Shown piece after piece: positions 3,430-14,152 of a stretch of DNA of 64,000 bases. The translations under genes and the position numbers were made by a program. Positions within the stretch are counted from its first letter, which is position 1, and every line of letters starts with the position of its first letter. Location of the stretch: the IMG/VR virus record IMGVR_UViG_3300044632_001003, positions 62,001 through 126,000 of that record. The stretch is one strand, 5' to 3'. Below the pieces are notes generated by a model. That model ran no database searches. It saw only the letters and a program-made list of their open reading frames with translations, and was not told where the DNA came from.

Positions 3430-3815
3430 TTGCTCTTGATATCTGCCCTCTGGGTCTTTAAAGTACTTATACCCTACGGACATCGATACCAAAGGTATCT
3501 ATAAGAATTCATATTTCTAGATATCATTCTCAATAAGAAAGGTCTTATTGAGAATTATAATAAAGCACATTTAGATGGTGTGGGAAGGGGTGAGTGGGGT
3601 GAAGCACATATTCTTGCACATAAGGCGGGCTATGTGTGCCGCGTGGGTATCTAGAACTCACCAGCCGCGATTCTCAATAAGAAACTAGTTATTGAGAATG
3701 AGATCTAGATGTGTATGTGTGTATCTAGATGATGTATGATGTGTGCGTCTCGACGAGATATAATGAATGCGTGTGCGATCTAGTCGAGACCACACACGCA
3801 CGTCTCGACGAGATT
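3430..3815. repeat. non-coding repeat/hairpin block A
   Basis: inverted repeats ATTCTCAATAA..TTATTGAGAAT at 3526-3555 and 3670-3699; CTCGWCGAG-type motifs at 3749, 3780, 3804; several TCTAGA; no credible ORF. Confidence 0.75.
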
Positions 3816-4289
3816 CTACCAGTTCTTATTGAACACGAACCCATCTTCGAAATCAAAATCATAACGAAGATTACAGTTCCAGGTAGCATCCCAATCAACT
3901 ACCACGAACGAAGGTGCATCAAACCCATAGATGTCAGTGGTAAATTCTTCGGCAAATGCTGCCTCAGAATCATAAGGACCCTGATAGGCATCTTCGAAAG
4001 ACTGAAGATCCGCCTCATCATAGAGTTCCAGGAATGCATTCACAGCACCCTTACCATAAGAACTACACAGAGTCTGATACAGTTCCTGATACTCTTCGGA
4101 GATCTCATCCTCCAGAGTATCATTGTTCAGGATACCCTTGACAGTCAGCAACTCAGTGTAGAATTCAGTGTATTTGAGTTTGCCATCACGCTCATACCCA
4201 CAGGCACGAACGATTTCAGACATCTTAGCAGGCGGGTTTTGTGCCTGCATTTCATTCACTTTGTTCAGCAGGGAAGAACCAGTCAGCAT
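3816..4289 (-). CDS. fusion of cyanobacterial AbrB-like N-terminal domain and ArdA-like acidic C-terminal domain
   Basis: N-terminus MLTG..LLNKV..SEIVRACGY....YTEFYTELLTVKG; C-terminus YQGPYDSEAAFAEE...VDWDATW...DFEDGFVF. Confidence 0.6.
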   Translation of the reverse strand: MLTGSSLLNKVNEMQAQNPPAKMSEIVRACGYERDGKLKYTEFYTELLTVKGILNNDTLEDEISEEYQELYQTLCSSYGKGAVNAFLELYDEADLQSFEDAYQGPYDSEAAFAEEFTTDIYGFDAPSFVVVDWDATWNCNLRYDFDFEDGFVFNKNW

Positions 4290-4313
4290 GGTCGGTGTCT
4301 CAGGAACGAATGT

Positions 4314-4372
4314 AATGTAGATCGGATTGGTCAGGAACGCAAGGGGGTGTGTGCCACTTATCAGACTGGCAC
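4314..4372 (-). promoter_or_regulatory. early promoter cassette
   Basis: GTGCCACT-N6-ACTGGCAC 4351-4372; -35 TTGCGT, 17 bp, -10 TACATT. Confidence 0.8.
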
Positions 4373-4558
4373 AAGCCCCATCTCATCAATCATAATATCC
4401 CGCACACTTTCACGGTCGAAACTATCACCACAGAAATCAGCACCTGAATGAATGTATTTAAACGTTGCCTCAATGATATCATCATCAGTGGCACCCATAT
4501 CATAAATGCCACCAGGACCATAGAAGGACTTTACGTAACGAATGAATTCCACCATCAC
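4361..4558 (-). CDS. small acidic hypothetical protein
   Basis: 65-aa track ORF with GDSFDRESVRD motif; ends inside the palindrome. Confidence 0.75.
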   Translation of the reverse strand: MMVEFIRYVKSFYGPGGIYDMGATDDDIIEATFKYIHSGADFCGDSFDRESVRDIMIDEMGLVPV

Positions 4559-4782
4559 TTCACCTCCGCCAGCAGCAGTTTGTGAATGCGGTCTGCTTCC
4601 TCTAAGATATCACCATCCAGACGGTCCCACTCTACCCAATCATAGGCAGAAAGTGCAGTCTCATAAGAACCATCAGGCAGCAGGTTAGCATACATCAGAA
4701 CCCGCTGATTGTTTGCATCCAAAGTGTAAGTGCAATTGTTGAGTTTGGAGATGGCGAAAACCATTGGATTTCTCAGCGACAA
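4555..4782 (-). CDS. hypothetical protein
   Basis: 75-aa track ORF; ATGA overlap with the next gene. Confidence 0.7.
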   Translation of the reverse strand: MSLRNPMVFAISKLNNCTYTLDANNQRVLMYANLLPDGSYETALSAYDWVEWDRLDGDILEEADRIHKLLLAEVK

Positions 4783-4786
4783 ATGA

Positions 4787-4860
4787 ATATTACCCCACCA
4801 GAGGACCCAGTGGCCAGAGGACCCAGTGGGGAATCAGTGTGCCACTACCTCAACTGTCAC
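4787..4860 (-). promoter_or_regulatory. early promoter cassette with a 16-bp tandem duplication in the spacer
   Basis: GTGCCACT-N6-ACTGTCAC 4839-4860; CCAGAGGACCCAGTGG x2 at 4798-4829. Confidence 0.65.
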
Positions 4861-4996
4861 ATGCAACGAACTCTTGGAGATAGTAATCCAATGGCAGCTC
4901 AAGTTCAGCCGCTTTCTGTTCCCAAGCATCCCATTCTTCCTGGGAAGCATCATTCAGAAAATCTTCGAAAGTATAATCAAAAACTGGACCACACAT
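4850..4996 (-). CDS. 48-aa acidic protein ending KAAELELPLDYYLQEFV (paralog of 11367..11573)
   Basis: start moved to MCGPVF, downstream of promoter 5021-5079. Confidence 0.7.
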   Translation of the reverse strand: MCGPVFDYTFEDFLNDASQEEWDAWEQKAAELELPLDYYLQEFVACDS

Positions 4997-5020
4997 TGGA
5001 TTAATTGCGACGACGAAGGT

Positions 5021-5079
5021 AGAATATCCCACCTGGTGGCAGATATCAAGGGGTCTTGTGCCAGTTCTCAAACTGTCAC
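5021..5079 (-). promoter_or_regulatory. early promoter cassette
   Basis: GTGCCAGT-N6-ACTGTCAC 5058-5079; -35 TTGATA, 17 bp, -10 TATTCT. Confidence 0.8.
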
Positions 5080-5080
5080 A

Positions 5081-5191
5081 TTACTCGAACGGGTCGAATT
5101 CTTTTACCCTACAATGAACATCTTCGTTAGGTTCGAGTTGCAATAACTCCCGCCAATCGATGTTATCCAGGTCCAGATCATCATAACACAT
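5081..5191 (-). CDS. 36-aa acidic micro-protein (MCYDDLDLDNIDWRELLQLEPNEDVHCRVKEFDPFE)
   Basis: hand translation. Confidence 0.55.
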   Translation of the reverse strand: MCYDDLDLDNIDWRELLQLEPNEDVHCRVKEFDPFE

Positions 5192-5265
5192 GATATCTAG
5201 TGTAACCTGTACGATACGCTTCTGTGCTAACATGAGGTCTAGATGTGTATGTGTACTAGATTATA

Positions 5266-5418
5266 TCATGCATAATGACGATATGCAAGCGATTCGTAAT
5301 CTTGCCCATCTCGTGCATAATCCTCGTCGAGATCTAGTGCATCCTGTGCATAATACTCGTCGAGATCTTGTCCGTAATCGTTGCTGAATGTATAGTCGAG
5401 ATCGTAGTCGTCGTACAT
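5266..5418 (-). CDS. 50-aa Asp/Tyr-rich micro-protein (MYDDYDLDYTFSNDYGQDLDEYYAQDALDLDEDYARDGQDYESLAYRHYA)
   Basis: hand translation; first ORF downstream of the consensus promoter at 5570-5598. Confidence 0.65.
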   Translation of the reverse strand: MYDDYDLDYTFSNDYGQDLDEYYAQDALDLDEDYARDGQDYESLAYRHYA

Positions 5419-5569
5419 AGCTCGTCGAGATTTGTTGAACGCTTATGAATTGTAGCATAAAACTCGACGAGATTGCAAGCCTTATGATGCACCGTCTCGT
5501 CGAGATTCATGCTAGTATATATGCACTCTCGTCGAGAAATGTTAAGATATGCTTATATTTCTCGACTAG
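5323..5569. repeat. phased array of CTCGWCGAG interrupted palindromes (block B)
   Basis: copies start at 5323, 5356, (5392), 5421, 5463, 5496, 5528, 5561. Confidence 0.8.
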
Positions 5570-5598
5570 ATTCTACCATACCCTTATAAGAATGTCAA
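5570..5598 (-). promoter_or_regulatory. consensus sigma70 promoter
   Basis: TTGACA-17-TAGAAT. Confidence 0.8.
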
Positions 5599-5647
5599 GG
5601 TCTGTGAGCCTTATGTGTGGGTCTGGGGATTTTCGGCGGGGCGTGGC

Positions 5648-5676
5648 TTGACAAACTGCGCGTCTTATGCTATACC
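5648..5676 (+). promoter_or_regulatory. divergent sigma70 promoter
   Basis: TTGACA-17-TATACC with extended TG. Confidence 0.6.
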
Positions 5677-5893
5677 TGCTTAGGTCACAAGACTTAGACC
5701 TATTCTCATCAATTAACTCAATTGATTCTCAATTATTCATTTTTATTGAGAATGTTACAAATCACTGACATATATTTAATTTAATATTAACCTTCCATAC
5801 CTCACCATAATACACAACACCAAATTCATTATACCGTGTTATTAATTATACATACACTGTTATAAATCCACAGTACACACCGTGTTATAAACA

Positions 5894-6727
5894 ATGGCAA
5901 GAGGCATCATTTATCTCATCATCAACAAGCAAACTGGTGAAAAATACGTCGGAAACACCACACTTGCAATGAATAAAGAATGGGCACACCAGATAGACCG
6001 TGCTAAAAGAATGTCCCGAGAACCCTTACACAAGGCATTCAGAGAACATGGTGTCCATAACTTTATGATTAGAGAGTTAGATGAATGCGATGAATTAGAG
6101 TTTAATGAGAAAACAAACTATTGGATAGAGCAATACAAACCTGAATACAATCCTGCCATTAGCGCCATAGAGATTGCTAAGAAGGCAATAGAAGAGTATA
6201 AACCTGCCGAAGGCAGGCCTGCCGAAGGCATAAGTGCCGAAGGCATAAGCGCAAGCGCCGCAAGCGCAGCACTACAAGAACTTGCTAAACCAAAACCAAA
6301 AGAAAAAAGAAAAGTTAATACCTCACACTTAATGCAATGGAATGAGAATACCCGTGGAGATGGTAAGAAGACAGGTCTTAAAATAAGATGCAAGAACTTA
6401 GAAACTGGTGTATGCACTGATTATGAATCAGCCAGAGAAGCAGCAACACAAGTGACAGGCAATCCGAATAACCGTGCAAACATTCTATCTGCTGCCAGGC
6501 ATTACCGCATTGCCTATGGTCATCGTTGGCAGATCTTAGAAGAAAAGGAAAAGAAAAAGGCGGTGTTTGGTGTCGATAAAAAAACGGAGATAATTGGTCC
6601 CCGTTGTGAAAGTATTAATGCTGCTGTTCATTTTTTTGAAGGCACCGATAAAAACGGAATTCTCAAGAGTCTGAAGAATCCAGGGCGTTATAGTTGGAAA
6701 GGTTATTACTGGTTCTATGTACGTTAA
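5894..6727 (+). CDS. GIY-YIG-fold protein with C-terminal NUMOD1-like DNA-binding modules; catalytic Arg and Glu appear replaced
   Basis: GIIY..KYVG N-terminus, NKEW instead of KRW, EKT instead of ERE, YN; two (K/R)xxTG...ES..(E/A)A modules. Confidence 0.7.
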   Translation: MARGIIYLIINKQTGEKYVGNTTLAMNKEWAHQIDRAKRMSREPLHKAFREHGVHNFMIRELDECDELEFNEKTNYWIEQYKPEYNPAISAIEIAKKAIEEYKPAEGRPAEGISAEGISASAASAALQELAKPKPKEKRKVNTSHLMQWNENTRGDGKKTGLKIRCKNLETGVCTDYESAREAATQVTGNPNNRANILSAARHYRIAYGHRWQILEEKEKKKAVFGVDKKTEIIGPRCESINAAVHFFEGTDKNGILKSLKNPGRYSWKGYYWFYVR

Positions 6728-6916
6728 TCAGAGTCCTTTATCTCTTTTCTCTTGATTCGCCGTCTGCTGCAAATGCATAGTCGTATGAAGACGTTGTAGA
6801 TTCGCATAGCGATTGTGCTGACGTGTTATGATTCCACTTTCCTTGGCTTTTGCAGCATCAACCTTTGCCTGTGGTGTTGTGAGAATCTGTTCCATGAACT
6901 GAAAGAACGTCTTCAT
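6728..6916 (-). CDS. small late protein with an MKTF..F..E N-terminus resembling the T4 capsid-targeting sequence
   Basis: MKTFFQFMEQ; late promoter ATAAATA at 6937-6943. Confidence 0.55.
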   Translation of the reverse strand: MKTFFQFMEQILTTPQAKVDAAKAKESGIITRQHNRYANLQRLHTTMHLQQTANQEKRDKGL

Positions 6917-6962
6917 TTATCCTCTGACTTTTTGAGTATTTATGGCGTCGCAAACCTCGATC

Positions 6963-7499
6963 TTAGAAACCATAGAATGATTGTGAGATAAAGAAATTAT
7001 AAGTCAATCGACCATCTGTAATATCATTACCATAAGGTGATGTAGGAGCATGAACATAATACCCAGGATAGGCAATCAATCGATTATACTTATGAGCATA
7101 CGATACTATCTCATTCTTCTCTCCATTGACAATTGATGTGCCACAGGATTCTGGTGCATCAGACAAATAGATGACCCCTGCATAAGGCACAGGATCAGCA
7201 TGATACTTGTAATGATGATAATCTTTGATTCTTGTGTTTCTATCGCTTTGGATATCCCAGTCGATAACCTCAGTGGGAAGAATATGAAAATAAGACTCAA
7301 TCAGATAATTCTGAATCTTGAAATGCTCCGATACAGTATGAAGAACATTCTCTTGTATTTCAGGACAATACAATGGACCCGTGCGGTATCCTTGCCATCC
7401 AGAATCAATATCCTTAGAGCAGTTATAATTCTGCTCCAAGGACATCTCTATGACTTCTTCTGGATTCTCAAAGAAGTCATCAATAACAAGTACGTTCAT
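6963..7499 (-). CDS. 2OG-Fe(II) oxygenase-like protein (DUF6445-like)
   Basis: VIDDFF N-terminus, HAD..YAGVIYL, NRLIAY...H, RLTYNFF. Confidence 0.75.
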   Translation of the reverse strand: MNVLVIDDFFENPEEVIEMSLEQNYNCSKDIDSGWQGYRTGPLYCPEIQENVLHTVSEHFKIQNYLIESYFHILPTEVIDWDIQSDRNTRIKDYHHYKYHADPVPYAGVIYLSDAPESCGTSIVNGEKNEIVSYAHKYNRLIAYPGYYVHAPTSPYGNDITDGRLTYNFFISQSFYGF

Positions 7500-7524
7500 T
7501 TCTTTGATTGTTGTGCTGATTTAA

Positions 7525-7869
7525 TCACTGAGGAGGTTCTGGAATATGATCGTCAGGACAACAATCTTTTCTTGACTCCATGAACTTATCAAACTCTCCA
7601 TTCATCCAATCTTCATCAGATTCTCTCCATTTACCCAATGGGCAGGCATCAAGAGCAAAACGAACTTTTGAATCCAAATAACAACCACATTCCTTACAAC
7701 GATTGGGAATTGGGTCGCGGCGATCACAGGCTTCACAAATTGCCTTTCTCTTTAATACAACTTCATTGGAACAAAACAAACTATCACTTGCTTGTGCGTA
7801 CTTGAGCACATCAAATGCAAACTTTGCAAGATTTTTTGCTTGCTGTGGTAACGATGGATAATCACTCAT
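7525..7869 (-). CDS. small Cys-rich protein (CxxC...CxxCGC...CPLGKW)
   Basis: 114-aa track ORF. Confidence 0.75.
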   Translation of the reverse strand: MSDYPSLPQQAKNLAKFAFDVLKYAQASDSLFCSNEVVLKRKAICEACDRRDPIPNRCKECGCYLDSKVRFALDACPLGKWRESDEDWMNGEFDKFMESRKDCCPDDHIPEPPQ

Positions 7870-9020
7870 TGGTACAATCCTTTAATGGTTTCAGAAGTTA
7901 ATTCACCTGTATATATGTAATTTCCTAGGGCAGGGGCAATGGCACGTCCTGCATTTCCTGCAATACCACCATTACCTACAAGTGTCGATGTTGGTGATGT
8001 TGTGGTTGCTGCTGACCCTGATCCAAATAGAGCACCTGATGAACCTGGCTCTCCAGGATTTCCACTGGGTTGTCCATATTGAGGACTTGCTCCACATCCA
8101 CCAGGCGCTCCTGCTCCACCAGCAACACCTGTAGTGCTTGGTTGATTGTATCCTTGACCGATTCCACCTGCACCACCATCACCACCAGGAGCAGCAGGCA
8201 CAGCATAATCAACTTGACAAAGATTATACCAACGTCCTACATTGCATCCACGGTTAAATTCACAGCAGTTGCCATCACCACCACCTTTACCACCTACTTT
8301 ATATCCACCAGGACAGTTATTGTTTGGACCACCACCACAATAACCACCAGTCCAATACTGATAGTTACAAGTTCCAGGATTGCCTGATGTACCTTGAGAA
8401 CCTCTGGCTCCACCTGATCCACCTGCATAAACCTGAGAACCTGCATCAATTACAACTTTAACAGCATATCCTGTTGAAGTTGAATAAATCGCAGATCCAC
8501 CTACAGCACCAGGCGTACTATAAACAGTTCCACCTGATCCACCTGCACCATGAATCTTTCCACCATTTTGAACAATCAAAGACAGATTGTAGGCCAATGA
8601 ATCAAACCTTGCCGCAGGTGAAGATGTGTTGATGGATCCAATCGTTCCCTGAACATAGAATCTCTTCTTGATGTTCTTGGGTAGATTACCAAACCAATTC
8701 TGTGCTCCAACATCAACACCAGGATTGCTAAAGTTGGCAGAGTTATCATCCGTTCCTGTCTGAACCAAATTATAATACTTCAGACTATTGCGAAACTGCG
8801 AACTCTTGAGATTCTTTGTCGTGCTGTTTGCAATCTGTGAGTTTTCAACAGCATCGGGTACAATTGGATCTGTTTCTGCAGAGGTTGTAACCGTTGTATT
8901 TCTCAGCAATTCAGATGCCTTAATTGGACCTGATGCAACTTCCTTAAAAGAGTTTCTTAGATCTCCAAACTTAATTGGACCTGATGAAAATAAAAACGTA
9001 TTACTTGTCGATATTGCCAT
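7866..9020 (-). CDS. glycine-rich virion/tail-associated protein with an internal Cys-rich loop
   Basis: GGxG repeats; late promoter CTAAATA at 9051-9057. Confidence 0.7.
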   Translation of the reverse strand: MAISTSNTFLFSSGPIKFGDLRNSFKEVASGPIKASELLRNTTVTTSAETDPIVPDAVENSQIANSTTKNLKSSQFRNSLKYYNLVQTGTDDNSANFSNPGVDVGAQNWFGNLPKNIKKRFYVQGTIGSINTSSPAARFDSLAYNLSLIVQNGGKIHGAGGSGGTVYSTPGAVGGSAIYSTSTGYAVKVVIDAGSQVYAGGSGGARGSQGTSGNPGTCNYQYWTGGYCGGGPNNNCPGGYKVGGKGGGDGNCCEFNRGCNVGRWYNLCQVDYAVPAAPGGDGGAGGIGQGYNQPSTTGVAGGAGAPGGCGASPQYGQPSGNPGEPGSSGALFGSGSAATTTSPTSTLVGNGGIAGNAGRAIAPALGNYIYTGELTSETIKGLYQ

Positions 9021-12481: not shown

Positions 12482-12540
12482 ATTATAGGGCAGAGTCAGG
12501 GCAGAGTCAGGGCAGAGTATGCCAGTTCATCAAGTGGACC
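12482..12540 (-). promoter_or_regulatory. early promoter cassette whose spacer is an 11-bp tandem repeat x3
   Basis: ATGCCAGT-N6-AGTGGACC 12519-12540; GGGCAGAGTCA x3; -10 TATAAT. Confidence 0.7.
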
Positions 12541-14152
12541 CTCTGTGAATGTTTTGTCTCAAATAGTCATACATTGACTGGCATTGTGATGCATAGGACT
12601 GATAGTGTTTTTGACAACCAGTAAAAACATCTGATAGGTAATCCAAATATGCATCACAATCTAATCCTTTTAACTTACCCATTGCCAAATGTAGATGTGC
12701 ATCCACAGGAGAATAATCCATACCTGCAGCAATACATTGAAATCCTGCCCCTGGTTGATATTCCCCAAACTTGTATCGGGCATTTGCAGTGAACATAAAC
12801 TCACTGGTTGCAACAATATCCCCAACCTTACTTTGCATGGATAAAGTATCTGCTATTGTTGAATTAACATCTGCAGAGATTCTACATCTCTCAGTAATAT
12901 CCATCCAATAGTCAGAGTCATGTCTTGGACTGATTGCATAATGCAATGCTACAAATTGTGCTAATTGATAGTAGGTCTGACTCATTGAAAAATTATAAGC
13001 ATCTCTATCCCACTGATTAACAATCCTATTTCTGCGGAGAGTATGGGCAAGAGGAAGAAGGAATTCATATGTTGTTAGCAATCCTGTGCTTTCCAGTGGT
13101 TCAATAAATCCAGCAGCAAGACCAATACCAATCACATTCTTTTTCCAAATCTGATTATGCAAACCCAACTTCATATCAATTGGTCTATATTCCAATTCTT
13201 CAGGATCAACACGATGAGTGTGCTTAATGTGATTCTTGAATTCTTTCAGAGCATCTTCTGAAGAAATGTACTTATCACTATAGACATATCCACCACCAAT
13301 GCGAGACCACAAAGGAATATTCCATACCCAACCATTTGTCAGAGCAGTGCAGTTTGTAAATGGCTCTAATTGTTTCTTTTTATCTTTATATGGAATATGT
13401 GTCGCCCATGCTTTATTGTTTGGAATGATGTGAGAAATCGAATTGAACTTCTCTTCAAGAGCGCCACCCAAGAGCATACTCTTAAATCCTGTACAATCAA
13501 TGAACAAGTCTGCGGTAATTGTTGATCCATCTTTGAGTTTAAGATAATCAACTCCGTTCTCATTTGTAACTACACCATCTACAGTTGAATGAATCAACTT
13601 GACTCCTCTAGGGAGACAAACTGCAGTCTTCAAGTATTGTCCAAATGCTGTTGCATCAAAATGATAAGCAGCATCAAAGTTAAAATTAAATCCTGGAGTC
13701 TTTCCAGTACCATCTGTTGATATTTTTCTTTGTTCAGCAACAGCAGTGATTGGATAAAAACAACGGGCATATGAGTTCTTATCCAGAACATCAGGTCTTA
13801 GTTGTTTAACTAAGTACCAATCATTTCTACTCAGTTGTTCATGAGGAACCGTAGACATCCCAAATGGATAGTGAAAGGAACCAGTCCCCTTTCCTTCAAA
13901 ATCAGTAAATTTAATGCTTAATTTGTATATTCCATCAGTTTTATGCAAGAAATCTCTATCATTCAATCCAAGCAAAGAAGTCCAGTGCTTAATACCACCC
14001 AAGGTGCTTTCACCCACACCAAGAATAGCAAAGTCTGGACTTTCGATGACAGTTAGATCAATTTCAGGAATTTGAGTTGCAATGGTGGCAGCAGACATCC
14101 ATCCTGCCGAACCACCACCGACAACCACAATCTTTTTTATTTCTTTACTCAT
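12530..14152 (-). CDS. flavin-dependent tryptophan halogenase family protein (PrnA/RebH-like)
   Basis: VVGGGSAGW, GVGEST, YKLSIKF (catalytic Lys), FIDCTGF, GWVWNIP, FIEPLESTG. Confidence 0.92.
   Translation of the reverse strand: MSKEIKKIVVVGGGSAGWMSAATIATQIPEIDLTVIESPDFAILGVGESTLGGIKHWTSLLGLNDRDFLHKTDGIYKLSIKFTDFEGKGTGSFHYPFGMSTVPHEQLSRNDWYLVKQLRPDVLDKNSYARCFYPITAVAEQRKISTDGTGKTPGFNFNFDAAYHFDATAFGQYLKTAVCLPRGVKLIHSTVDGVVTNENGVDYLKLKDGSTITADLFIDCTGFKSMLLGGALEEKFNSISHIIPNNKAWATHIPYKDKKKQLEPFTNCTALTNGWVWNIPLWSRIGGGYVYSDKYISSEDALKEFKNHIKHTHRVDPEELEYRPIDMKLGLHNQIWKKNVIGIGLAAGFIEPLESTGLLTTYEFLLPLAHTLRRNRIVNQWDRDAYNFSMSQTYYQLAQFVALHYAISPRHDSDYWMDITERCRISADVNSTIADTLSMQSKVGDIVATSEFMFTANARYKFGEYQPGAGFQCIAAGMDYSPVDAHLHLAMGKLKGLDCDAYLDYLSDVFTGCQKHYQSYASQCQSMYDYLRQNIHRGST

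What the first reader, a model, noticed from the sequence alone, without database searches (positions are those of the whole stretch)
5894..6727. GIY-YIG protein with both catalytic residues changed and a mini-hairpin tandem-repeat linker
Seen: the KRW position reads KEW and the ERE..W position reads EKT..W, i.e. the equivalents of I-TevI R27 and E75 appear lost while the fold motifs and two NUMOD1-like modules remain. The linker (6203-6262) contains three TGCCGAAGGCA palindromic units and GCAAGC repeats encoding PAEGRPAEGISAEGISASAASAA. Upstream lie three (C)CGTGTTATAAA-like repeats (5834-5891). Inference: a homing endonuclease repurposed as a regulator or origin binder.
Basis: partly seen in the sequence, partly recalled or inferred. 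Interest (0 to 1): 0.6.

Follow-up and report, generated by a model that had tools for sequence, protein, structure and literature searches.

The report
Nuclease-dead homing endonuclease kept by cyanophages
A lake cyanophage carries a homing-endonuclease gene whose DNA-cutting residues are gone, yet selection has kept the protein intact across many related phages, so it has probably become a DNA-binding regulator.

Summary
ORF 5894-6727 (+, 277 aa) has an N-terminal domain with the I-TevI catalytic fold (Z 12.7, rmsd 1.7 A). Direct alignment with T4 I-TevI gives R27->E29, H31->Q33 and E75->T74. Tyr7, Tyr18 and Asn86 are kept. A disordered linker leads to two NUMOD1-type modules.

The gene and its three upstream repeats form a cassette of about 940 bp (window ~5804-6743). 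It sits at one insertion site in freshwater T4-like cyanophages. Of 80 neighbour-anchored loci, 49 are occupied, 17 are empty and 14 are uninformative.

Alleles at this site form a series. Some have intact catalytic residues, some have lost only the Arg, and a 43-sequence clade has lost both. That clade evolves under purifying selection (dN/dS 0.13 for the dead domain, 0.19 for the C-terminal domain). All 79 complete loci have open frames.

So this is not a decaying selfish gene. It is most likely a non-cleaving DNA-binding protein. The three repeats keep fixed geometry but co-vary in sequence with DNA-binding module 1, so autoregulation as in I-TevI is the likeliest role. That role is inferred, not shown.

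The linker repeat is a real 15-bp copy-number polymorphism. Its 23-nt double-palindrome core is identical in diverged alleles at different positions, which is unexplained. Nothing specifically supports origin binding.

The parts
5804..6743 (+). Insertion cassette: three direct repeats plus the GIY-YIG-like ORF. It is absent as a block from 17 related loci ('empty sites').
   Evidence: Empty-site loci (L122, L127, L131 and others) are homologous to the window up to about 5786-5803 and again from about 6744. The boundaries are approximate, within about 10 nt.
5834..5891 (+). Three direct repeats (CCGTGTTATAAA-like) at 5834, 5855 and 5880. Spacing is 21 and 25 bp, and the last unit ends 2 nt before the ATG. 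Candidate operator.
   Evidence: The geometry is conserved in nearly all loci while the sequence co-varies by lineage. The cluster is unique in the 205-kb genome. Distance in this region correlates best with module 1 distance.
5894..6727 (+). ORF, 277 aa: dead GIY-YIG domain, disordered linker, two NUMOD1-type modules.
5894..6157 (+). GIY-YIG-fold domain (aa 1-88). Changed residues: E29 (5978-5980) for Arg, Q33 (5990-5992) for His, T74 (6113-6115) for Glu. Y7, Y18, G20 and N86 are kept.
   Evidence: dN/dS is 0.13 in the both-lost clade.
6158..6370 (+). Linker (aa 89-159), predicted disordered (pLDDT 53-64 over about aa 100-160). Its length varies among alleles (total protein 243-293 aa).
6203..6271 (+). 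Tandem palindromic repeats: 15-bp units with a TGCCGAAGGCA core (3 copies), then 9-bp CGCAAGCGC (2.4 copies). This is a copy-number polymorphism. The 23-nt core 6236-6258 is identical in diverged alleles.
   Evidence: (15 nt left out at 6203 in an otherwise identical contig).
6371..6541 (+). DNA-binding module 1 (aa 160-216), NUMOD1 / I-HmuI-like.
   Evidence: (1u3e_M Z 8.5; 8b6e_B Z 7.2).
6554..6724 (+). DNA-binding module 2 (aa 221-277), with the same beta-beta-alpha-alpha-beta layout.
   Evidence: aligns to the P0161 NUMOD module, E 7e-4.
5648..5676 (+). Sigma-70-type promoter (TTGACA, 17 nt, extended -10 TGcTATACC) about 210 nt upstream of the ATG. It is conserved, spacer included, in all loci and is also present at empty sites, so it belongs to the backbone and not to the cassette. 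It probably supplies read-through transcription.
   Evidence: A metatranscriptome contig of a relative spans 5771-6026 (weak evidence).
6728..6916 (-). Convergent neighbour ORF (62 aa). Its last ~4 codons and stop codon come from the right end of the cassette.

Best explanation
The gene is a free-standing GIY-YIG homing-endonuclease cassette of the T4 Seg / I-TevI type, sitting at a single insertion site in freshwater T4-like cyanophages. In the lineage that holds the window, the nuclease centre was disabled. The I-TevI R27 equivalent became Glu, probably via Gln. The E75 equivalent then became Thr or Leu. This allele also changed the H31 equivalent to Gln. The protein did not decay afterwards. 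It was kept as a non-cleaving, sequence-specific DNA-binding protein. Two NUMOD1-type helix-turn-helix modules are joined by a floppy, length-polymorphic linker to a conserved but catalytically dead GIY-YIG domain. It most likely binds the three direct repeats that lie immediately in front of its own start codon and travel with it in the cassette. That would repress its own expression, as I-TevI does at its operator, and it may have further targets. Shown here: the fold, the residue replacements, the order of the alleles on the tree, purifying selection, the cassette boundaries, the geometry and co-variation of the repeats, and the linker polymorphism. Inferred: that it binds DNA, that the repeats are its sites, that it does not cut, and what benefit the phage gains.
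For: Fold and residues. The Pfam GIY-YIG score falls from 47-49 bits (intact alleles at the same site) to 41.8 (Arg lost), 33.7 (P0121) and 13 (window). Tree: intact L075/L076/L081, then L077 (QHEN) and P0121 (EHEN), then a both-lost clade of 43 rows with SH-aLRT 100. 116 of the 120 closest database homologs have Glu at the Arg position. Selection: dN/dS is 0.13 (N-domain) and 0.19 (C-domain) at median dS about 1.1. The Glu is kept through synonymous change, 38 GAA and 4 GAG. All 79 complete loci have open frames. Catalytic loss recurred independently in related lineages, including Synechococcus phage ACG-2014f gp103, so the proteins have a use that does not need cleavage. Cis element: three repeats at 21/25-bp spacing ending at the ATG in nearly all loci, with lineage-specific sequence. 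They are absent from empty sites and unique in the genome. Repeat-region distance tracks module 1 distance (r 0.52; partial 0.48 given the N-domain) more than it tracks the physically nearer N-domain. Precedent: I-TevI binds an operator upstream of its own ORF and represses it without cutting (PMC2988022; PDB 1t2t title).
Against: There is no biochemical evidence of DNA binding or of lack of cleavage. The gene is not universal: 17 of 66 informative related loci lack it, so any benefit is dispensable or conditional. The Mantel-type correlation does not correct for shared ancestry or linkage. The repeats lie in a 5' leader, so an RNA-level role or binding by another protein is not excluded. A strictly conserved Glu at the former Arg position could mean a rebuilt active site rather than a dead one. 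No other clusters of the repeat motif exist in the genome, so a role beyond self-regulation has no identified target.
Confidence: 0.6

Rival explanations
1. It is still an active endonuclease or nickase with a rearranged active site. For example, Glu29 could take over metal binding from the lost Glu, with Lys28/Lys73 replacing the Arg.
For: Glu29 is nearly invariant and kept through synonymous change. Tyr7, Tyr18, His33 (in most alleles) and Asn86 are retained. P0121 shows the R-to-E change arising while the canonical Glu was still present. The cassette still shows presence/absence polymorphism like a mobile HEG.
Against: Both residues that define GIY-YIG catalysis are gone. The former Glu position varies freely (Thr, or Leu with five different codons), as an unconstrained site would. 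Lys28 and Lys73 are also present in intact relatives, so they are not new compensations. The window allele has additionally lost the His. Related lineages put Val, Tyr, Lys, Ile or Ala at the Arg position.
Confidence: 0.1
2. It is a decaying selfish gene. After fixation at its site the homing endonuclease lost activity and is drifting towards loss (the homing cycle), with no function for the phage.
For: Catalytic residues are the expected first casualties. Empty sites exist. The homing-cycle model predicts such degeneration (PMC1654191).
Against: dN/dS is 0.13-0.19 across a clade with dS about 1.1. There are no frameshifts or stops in 79 complete loci. The dead domain is more conserved than the DNA-binding domain. 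The cis repeats keep exact geometry. The phage is abundant in 19 lake metagenome runs with the gene intact.
Confidence: 0.07
3. It is an immunity decoy. The dead protein occupies the recognition sites of active alleles carried by co-infecting phages. This protects its genome from cleavage and marker exclusion.
For: Intact and dead alleles occur in the same metagenome samples (3300042554: L009 and L082; 3300010370: L022/L052 and L076). The DNA-binding domain is conserved between intact and dead alleles. The gene appears to be transcribed from an early-type sigma-70 promoter.
Against: An occupied site is already disrupted as a target, so protection may be unnecessary. No target site has been identified. 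The empty-site junction carries no full copy of the repeat motif.
Confidence: 0.13
4. It is an origin-binding or replication protein that acts on the iteron-like repeats of the adjacent intergenic hub.
For: The hub 5320-5800 holds CTCGTCGAG repeats at about 32-33-bp spacing. Other loci carry variable ~21-bp tandem arrays next to AT-rich DNA.
Against: These repeats, and the promoter, are equally present at empty sites lacking the gene. The CTCGTCGAG repeats are invariant while the protein's DNA-binding modules vary. No replication gene is linked.
Confidence: 0.05

Closest known systems
I-TevI (phage T4 td intron GIY-YIG homing endonuclease and autorepressor)
   Same: Same catalytic-domain fold (Z 12.7, 27% identity). 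Same order of parts: N-terminal GIY-YIG domain, long linker, C-terminal DNA-binding domain. I-TevI binds an operator upstream of its own ORF without cutting it, which is the model for the proposed role of the three repeats.
   Different: R27, H31 and E75 are replaced. There is no Cys4 zinc finger in the linker. The DNA-binding part is two NUMOD1-type modules. The gene is free-standing, not intron-encoded. There are three direct repeats at the start codon rather than one operator over a late promoter.
Free-standing GIY-YIG endonucleases of T4 (SegA-G), 'intronless homing'
   Same: An intergenic cassette with presence/absence polymorphism at one site, inserted at the 3' end of a neighbouring gene. 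Modular GIY-YIG plus NUMOD architecture. Relatives hit Pfam SegE_GIY-YIG.
   Different: Most alleles, including the window's, lack the catalytic residues yet are under purifying selection. Sequence similarity to SegG is low (21%).
CapR of the Vibrio cholerae PLE satellite (domesticated homing-endonuclease relative acting as a repressor; PMC8096241)
   Same: A homing-endonuclease-derived protein used as a sequence-specific DNA-binding regulator without cleavage.
   Different: CapR is related to only the N-terminal DNA-binding part of putative T5orf172-type HEGs. Here the whole two-domain protein is kept, and the dead nuclease domain is its most conserved part.
LAGLIDADG maturases (e.g. I-AniI; homing endonucleases that acquired a host-beneficial second activity)
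   Same: The evolutionary route is the same: a selfish endonuclease retained for a second, non-cleaving nucleic-acid-binding function (PMC2647301, listed).
   Different: Different fold, an RNA-splicing function and intron context. Here no intron or RNA-binding evidence exists.
I-HmuI (HNH homing endonuclease) C-terminal NUMOD-like DNA-binding region
   Same: Module 1 superposes on I-HmuI residues 107-174 (Z 8.5, rmsd 2.7 A over 67 residues). Relatives hit Pfam I-HmuI_NUMOD-like.
   Different: A different nuclease domain. The window protein itself does not reach any Pfam NUMOD threshold.

Membership tests
GIY-YIG nuclease superfamily | Three-stranded sheet plus helices fold with the GIY and YIG motifs | tested here: met
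   AF2 model pLDDT >95 for aa 1-88. 1ln0_A Z 12.7, rmsd 1.7 A over 85 residues; also T4 EndoII Z 8.5 and UvrC Z 6.9. IIY at aa 5-7 and YVG at aa 18-20.
GIY-YIG nuclease superfamily | Catalytic Arg (I-TevI R27) | tested here: not met
   E29. The column is R in 113/139 relatives.
GIY-YIG nuclease superfamily | Metal-binding Glu (I-TevI E75) | tested here: not met
   T74. The column is E in 117/139 relatives.
GIY-YIG nuclease superfamily | Conserved His (I-TevI H31) and Asn (N90) | tested here: inconclusive
   The His is Q33 in the window but His in 46 of 47 distinct alleles from the loci. The Asn is kept as N86.
GIY-YIG nuclease superfamily | Pfam PF01541 score above the gathering threshold | tested here: not met
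   13 bits against a 22.6 cut-off (E 0.13) for the window protein. Intact alleles at the same site score 47-49 bits.
GIY-YIG nuclease superfamily | DNA cleavage activity | not testable with these tools
   Needs a nuclease assay.
Free-standing homing endonuclease gene (intronless homing) | Sporadic presence or absence at one defined intergenic site with sharp boundaries | tested here: met
   49 occupied, 17 empty and 14 uninformative among 80 loci anchored on the neighbour ORF. Boundaries are about 5804 and about 6743.
Free-standing homing endonuclease gene (intronless homing) | The encoded enzyme cuts the empty allele and drives gene conversion | not testable with these tools
   Unlikely for the window allele given the lost residues. 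Possible for the intact alleles L075/L076/L079-L082.
NUMOD1 DNA-binding module (PF07453) | Match to the Pfam model | tested here: not met
   No hit at E<=10 for the whole protein, aa 150-277, or either module alone.
NUMOD1 DNA-binding module (PF07453) | Homology to bona fide NUMOD1 modules, and a helix-turn-helix fold | tested here: met
   P0161 (NUMOD1 at aa 155-177, I-HmuI_NUMOD-like at 159-199) aligns to module 1 within an E 2e-21 alignment and to module 2 at E 7e-4. 29 of 81 relatives hit NUMOD1. I-HmuI Z 8.5.
I-TevI-type autorepressor | A cognate binding site overlapping the gene's own expression signals | tested here: inconclusive
   Three direct repeats end 0-4 nt before the ATG in most of the 44 distinct upstream regions. 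They are part of the cassette and co-vary with module 1. No binding data.
I-TevI-type autorepressor | Zinc finger in the linker that sets the cleavage distance | tested here: not met
   The region aligned to the I-TevI Cys4 finger keeps only C174 (and C166, which is variable). The linker is disordered and varies in length.
Domesticated homing endonuclease | Loss of catalytic residues together with long-term purifying selection | tested here: met
Domesticated homing endonuclease | A demonstrated host-beneficial function | not testable with these tools
   Needs genetics or biochemistry in a phage-host system.

The most novel reading that the evidence does not exclude
The cassette is a self-contained regulatory module born from a homing endonuclease: a nuclease-dead GIY-YIG/NUMOD protein plus three operator repeats whose sequence co-evolves with its recognition module. 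The phage keeps it as a transcription or translation regulator, or as an anti-homing immunity factor. Within it, the 23-nt double-hairpin unit (window 6236-6258) is a distinct in-frame micro-element. It copies itself to new positions in the disordered linker and is conserved at the nucleotide level, not the protein level.
Probability: 0.3. Interest if true: 0.75.

Novelty: new variant of a known kind. Interest (0 to 1): 0.6.

Why it matters
Homing endonucleases are expected to invade, become fixed, decay and be lost. Documented escapes from that cycle are few: LAGLIDADG maturases, I-TevI moonlighting as a repressor, and CapR. My paper searches found no earlier description of this cyanophage family.

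It offers a natural series at one locus. There are empty sites, intact alleles, alleles that lost one catalytic residue, and a large clade that lost both yet is under strong purifying selection. The cognate repeats travel with the gene. That makes the step from selfish nuclease to useful DNA-binding protein directly testable with a handful of natural alleles.

It also warns annotators. The gene is labelled 'HNH endonuclease', 'group I intron endonuclease' or 'cox1-i7 protein' in databases, and most copies probably cannot cut DNA.

The linker shows a hypervariable, hairpin-forming coding repeat that could serve as a strain marker in lake cyanophage populations.

Tried and rejected
1. Sequence search of the PDB with the protein and with a family profile found no I-TevI hit. 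The link needed fold comparison and a direct alignment.
2. Rfam scan of 5000-7200 found nothing above chance.
3. 'Core gene fixed in all relatives'. I first read the synteny that way. I rejected it after anchoring on the neighbour ORF revealed 17 empty sites.
4. 'The promoter at 5648 belongs to the gene'. Rejected, because it is present at empty sites.
5. 'The three repeats are T4-type late promoters (TATAAATA)'. Rejected, because most lineages have repeat sequences without that motif (e.g. CCATACAATACA), while spacing and position at the ATG are kept.
6. 'The linker unit is a genome-wide mobile mini-element'. Rejected: the 24-mer occurs in IMG/VR only in this gene (12 contigs), and C-GAA-G hairpins are not enriched in the genome.
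7. Reading the minus strand of the unit as a C(UUCG)G tetraloop terminator fails, because the palindrome has an odd length, so the loop has three bases on either strand.
8. Terminator scan found one minus-strand hit inside the ORF (6605-6583), at chance level and not conserved.
9. RegA (PF01818) as an alternative binder of the start-codon repeats: the search was uninformative because the control also found nothing.
10. BLASTP of module 1 against module 2 showed no detectable similarity. The repeat nature rests on structure and on P0161.
11. Leader RNA fold 5684-5920 has z -2.1, which is not compelling.

Full report
WHAT IS THERE. The window is part of a 205-kb IMG/VR virus record. The record encodes psbA and psbD. 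Its structural genes are closest to freshwater and marine Synechococcus myoviruses S-SRM01 and S-SKS1. Near-identical DNA occurs in 19 lake-water metagenome runs. It is therefore a freshwater T4-like cyanophage. ORF 5894..6727 (+, 277 aa) is the only plus-strand gene in a block of minus-strand small early-type ORFs.

- Pfam sees the GIY-YIG domain only weakly (13 bits against a cut-off of 22.6).
- An AlphaFold2 model built on 81 homologs is confident for aa 1-88 and 160-277 and disordered in between.
- The N-domain superposes on the I-TevI catalytic domain (1ln0_A, Z 12.7, rmsd 1.7 A over 85 residues). It also matches T4 EndoII and UvrC.
- I fetched T4 I-TevI by reference (L094:13698-14432:-) and aligned it directly. 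R27 corresponds to E29, H31 to Q33, E75 to T74 and N90 to N86. Y6 and Y17 are kept as Y7 and Y18.
- Against 138 representatives of the wider family, the same columns are R in 113, H in 128, E in 117 and N in 135 of 139 rows.
- The C-terminal half is two beta-beta-alpha-alpha-beta modules. Module 1 matches the I-HmuI DNA-binding region (Z 8.5).
- Both modules align to the NUMOD1 / I-HmuI_NUMOD-like module of a canonical relative, P0161. Pfam NUMOD1 itself does not hit the window protein.

IT IS A CASSETTE, NOT A CORE GENE.
- In 80 viral contigs found with the protein, the gene always lies about 0.4-0.9 kb from, and divergent to, two conserved 50-aa ORFs.
- Anchoring instead on one of those ORFs gave 80 loci. 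Of these, 49 have the gene, 14 lack enough sequence and 17 have an empty site.
- Empty sites keep homology to the window up to about 5803. That stretch includes both divergent sigma-70 promoters and the first ~100 nt after the plus-strand promoter. Homology resumes at about 6744, inside the last codons of the convergent 62-aa ORF.
- The insertion unit is therefore window ~5804-6743: the three repeats plus the ORF.
- The plus-strand promoter at 5648-5676 (TTGACA, 17 nt, extended -10) is conserved in every locus, spacer included. It is unique in the genome.
- That promoter belongs to the backbone and probably supplies read-through transcription.
- A metatranscriptome contig from a 90-95% identical relative spans 5771-6026. 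This is compatible with read-through, but it is weak evidence.
- Synechococcus phage ACG-2014f gp103 has the same arrangement: a lone plus-strand gene with about 520 bp upstream.

AN ALLELIC SERIES.
- At the same site, L075, L076 and L079-L082 keep R, H, E and N and score 47-49 bits on Pfam GIY-YIG.
- L077/L078 have Gln at the Arg position with the Glu intact (41.8 bits).
- The database protein P0121 has Glu at the Arg position with the canonical Glu intact (33.7 bits).
- All the others have lost both residues.
- In a maximum-likelihood tree rooted on I-TevI, the both-lost alleles form one clade of 43 distinct sequences (SH-aLRT 100).
- That clade is nested in a starred clade of 48, with the intact alleles at its base and the single-loss alleles between them. 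The support for that middle step is 91, not starred.
- So the Arg was probably lost first and the Glu second.
- The direction of change is inferred from the canonical state of the whole superfamily.
- Among the 120 closest database homologs, 116 have Glu at the Arg position. 85 have Thr and 31 have Leu at the Glu position.
- Both-residue loss needs at least three separate changes on the tree (four at the minimum count). Besides the window's clade it occurs in the ACG-2014f clade, P0132/P0143, P0142/P0148 and P0127.

NOT DECAY.
- Within the both-lost clade, pairwise Nei-Gojobori dN/dS is 0.13 for the dead domain and 0.19 for the C-terminal domain, at median dS about 1.1.
- All 79 loci not cut by a contig end have full-length open frames.
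- The Glu that replaced the Arg is kept through synonymous change (38 GAA, 4 GAG).
- The former Glu position is Thr, or Leu with five different codons.
- A selfish endonuclease that can no longer drive has no way to maintain such constraint, so the protein does something for the phage or for the cassette.

WHAT IT PROBABLY DOES.
- The three direct repeats are part of the cassette.
- In most of the 44 distinct upstream regions they keep spacings of 21 and 25 bp (21 and 23 bp in the basal clades). The last unit ends 0-4 nt before the ATG.
- Their sequence differs by lineage: CCGTGTTATAA, CCATACAATA, CTTTATTATACA and TTATCTACTATA types.
- They are not late promoters, since most types lack the TATAAATA motif.
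- In the window genome the cluster is unique.
- Repeat type follows the variant of the module 1 helix: SAARHYRI with GTGTTAT, LAARTGRT with ATACAAT, NAARSGII with GTAAGAT/GTACTAT, and LAAKKDGT with ATCTAC. This holds even across different N-domain clades.
- In Mantel-type tests, repeat-region distance correlates with module 1 distance at r 0.52 (partial 0.48 given the N-domain). That is stronger than with the adjacent N-domain (0.44), and stronger than for a control leader segment (0.21).
- These tests do not remove shared ancestry, so I treat them as suggestive.
- The closest mechanistic precedent is I-TevI. It binds an operator upstream of its own ORF with homing-site affinity and represses transcription without cutting (PMC2988022).
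- I therefore propose autoregulatory binding to the three repeats by a non-cleaving protein. An anti-homing decoy role is a serious alternative, because intact and dead alleles co-occur in the same samples.
- Origin binding has no specific support. The iteron-like CTCGTCGAG repeats, and the variable ~21-bp arrays of the hub, are present whether or not the gene is.

THE LINKER.
- The linker is predicted disordered, and total protein length ranges from 243 to 293 aa.
- The 15-bp units are a genuine copy-number polymorphism. A 12.5-kb contig from a 2016 freshwater metagenome is identical to the window over 4300-7998 except that 15 nt are missing at 6203.
- Alleles otherwise identical or close (83-98% amino-acid identity) carry 272, 293, 260 or 254 aa.
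- The units fold as C-GAA-G mini-hairpins in DNA. They are the only such hairpins in the genome.
- The 23-nt core (window 6236-6258, encoding AEGISASA) is 100% identical in five alleles whose domains are 72-85% identical in DNA. It sits at four or more different linker positions.
- The 24-mer occurs in IMG/VR only in this gene.
- Slippage explains copy number but not relocation. Recombination between co-infecting phages, or selection at the nucleotide level, remains open.
- The loss of the I-TevI-type zinc finger and the free variation in linker length fit a protein that no longer has to place a nuclease at a fixed distance. This is inference.

COMPARISON AND NOVELTY. The protein is a structural member of the GIY-YIG superfamily and a relative of the T4 Seg / I-TevI endonucleases, but it fails the catalytic criteria. 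It works most like I-TevI in its repressor mode. Its evolution resembles CapR (PMC8096241) and the LAGLIDADG maturases. I found no description of a nuclease-dead, selection-maintained GIY-YIG homing-endonuclease family in cyanophages. Sullivan et al. 2010 noted in passing unrelated endonuclease-like cyanophage genes without catalytic residues. I rate it a new variant of a known kind.

LIMITS. Nothing here measures binding or cleavage. The dN/dS values are pairwise and ignore recombination, which is evident between modules 1 and 2. The tree used the quick search. Cassette boundaries are good to about 10 nt. The RNA evidence comes from contigs of relatives in one metatranscriptome.

Noticed in passing
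window 3749-5536 (sites at 3749, 3804, 5323, 5356, 5421, 5463, 5496, 5528; degenerate copy near 5560): The 9-mer CTCGTCGAG (usually CTCGTCGAGAT) occurs 8 times in the 205-kb genome, all of them here, mostly at ~32-33-bp spacing and in both orientations. The copies are invariant across 44 related loci. They lie partly in the 5' region and partly inside the small acidic ORFs, in different reading frames, so this looks like a DNA- or RNA-level repeat. Metagenome assemblies break at 5390-5435.
   Followed up: partly
window 5648-5790: A plus-strand sigma-70 promoter with a conserved spacer is present in occupied and empty loci alike. A conserved pair of hairpins follows it (about 5708-5751). In many other loci, variable tandem arrays of ~21-bp repeats (CACAAGACC.AGAGGCATTTATAAG-like, 1-5 copies) also follow. 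It could be a small RNA gene or a regulatory or iteron array independent of the GIY cassette.
   Followed up: partly
window 5570-5598 (-): A strong minus-strand sigma-70 promoter (TTGACA, 17 nt, TG-TAGAAT; 11 of 12 matches) lies back to back with the plus-strand promoter. It drives the small ORFs at 5266-5418 and 5081-5233. That region has the highest depth in the one metatranscriptome examined.
   Followed up: partly
window 6725-6745: The cassette's right end supplies the last ~4 codons and the stop of the convergent 62-aa ORF (6728-6916, -). The two stop codons abut (TAA 6725-6727, TCA 6728-6730). At empty sites that ORF ends differently (..QEKKGMKG against ..QEKRDKGL).
   Followed up: yes
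window 6371-6724 and alignment A1: Variants of module 2 (..EIIGPRCES.. against ..EQIEVRYES..) are shuffled relative to variants of module 1 and of the N-domain. This indicates recombination inside the gene between co-occurring phages.
   Followed up: partly
L061:1838-1870: In a related contig, two adjacent C-GAA-G hairpins (a TGCCGAAGGCA-type and a CCCCGAAGGGG-type) sit in an intergenic region just before a TATAAT. So similar mini-hairpins exist outside the linker in relatives.
   Followed up: no
L095:3560-3990 (Synechococcus phage ACG-2014f, upstream of gp103): The marine homolog also has a long leader after a TTGACT promoter. The leader is full of short direct repeats (AACGGGCAG..GTTTAGG twice; TCTATT-type many times). 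Its protein has Val at both the Arg and Glu positions. RefSeq calls it 'HNH endonuclease' and GenBank calls it 'cox1-i7 protein'.
   Followed up: partly
G000:C1:23990-24112 (-), outside the window: A second weak GIY-YIG-like match in the same genome (14 bits, one in-frame TAA).
   Followed up: no
window 12530-14152 (-); G000:C1:161137-163685: The window holds a tryptophan-halogenase-like gene (PHROG 2928, E 6e-137). The genome holds psbA and psbD. These are typical cyanophage auxiliary genes and identify the host group.
   Followed up: partly
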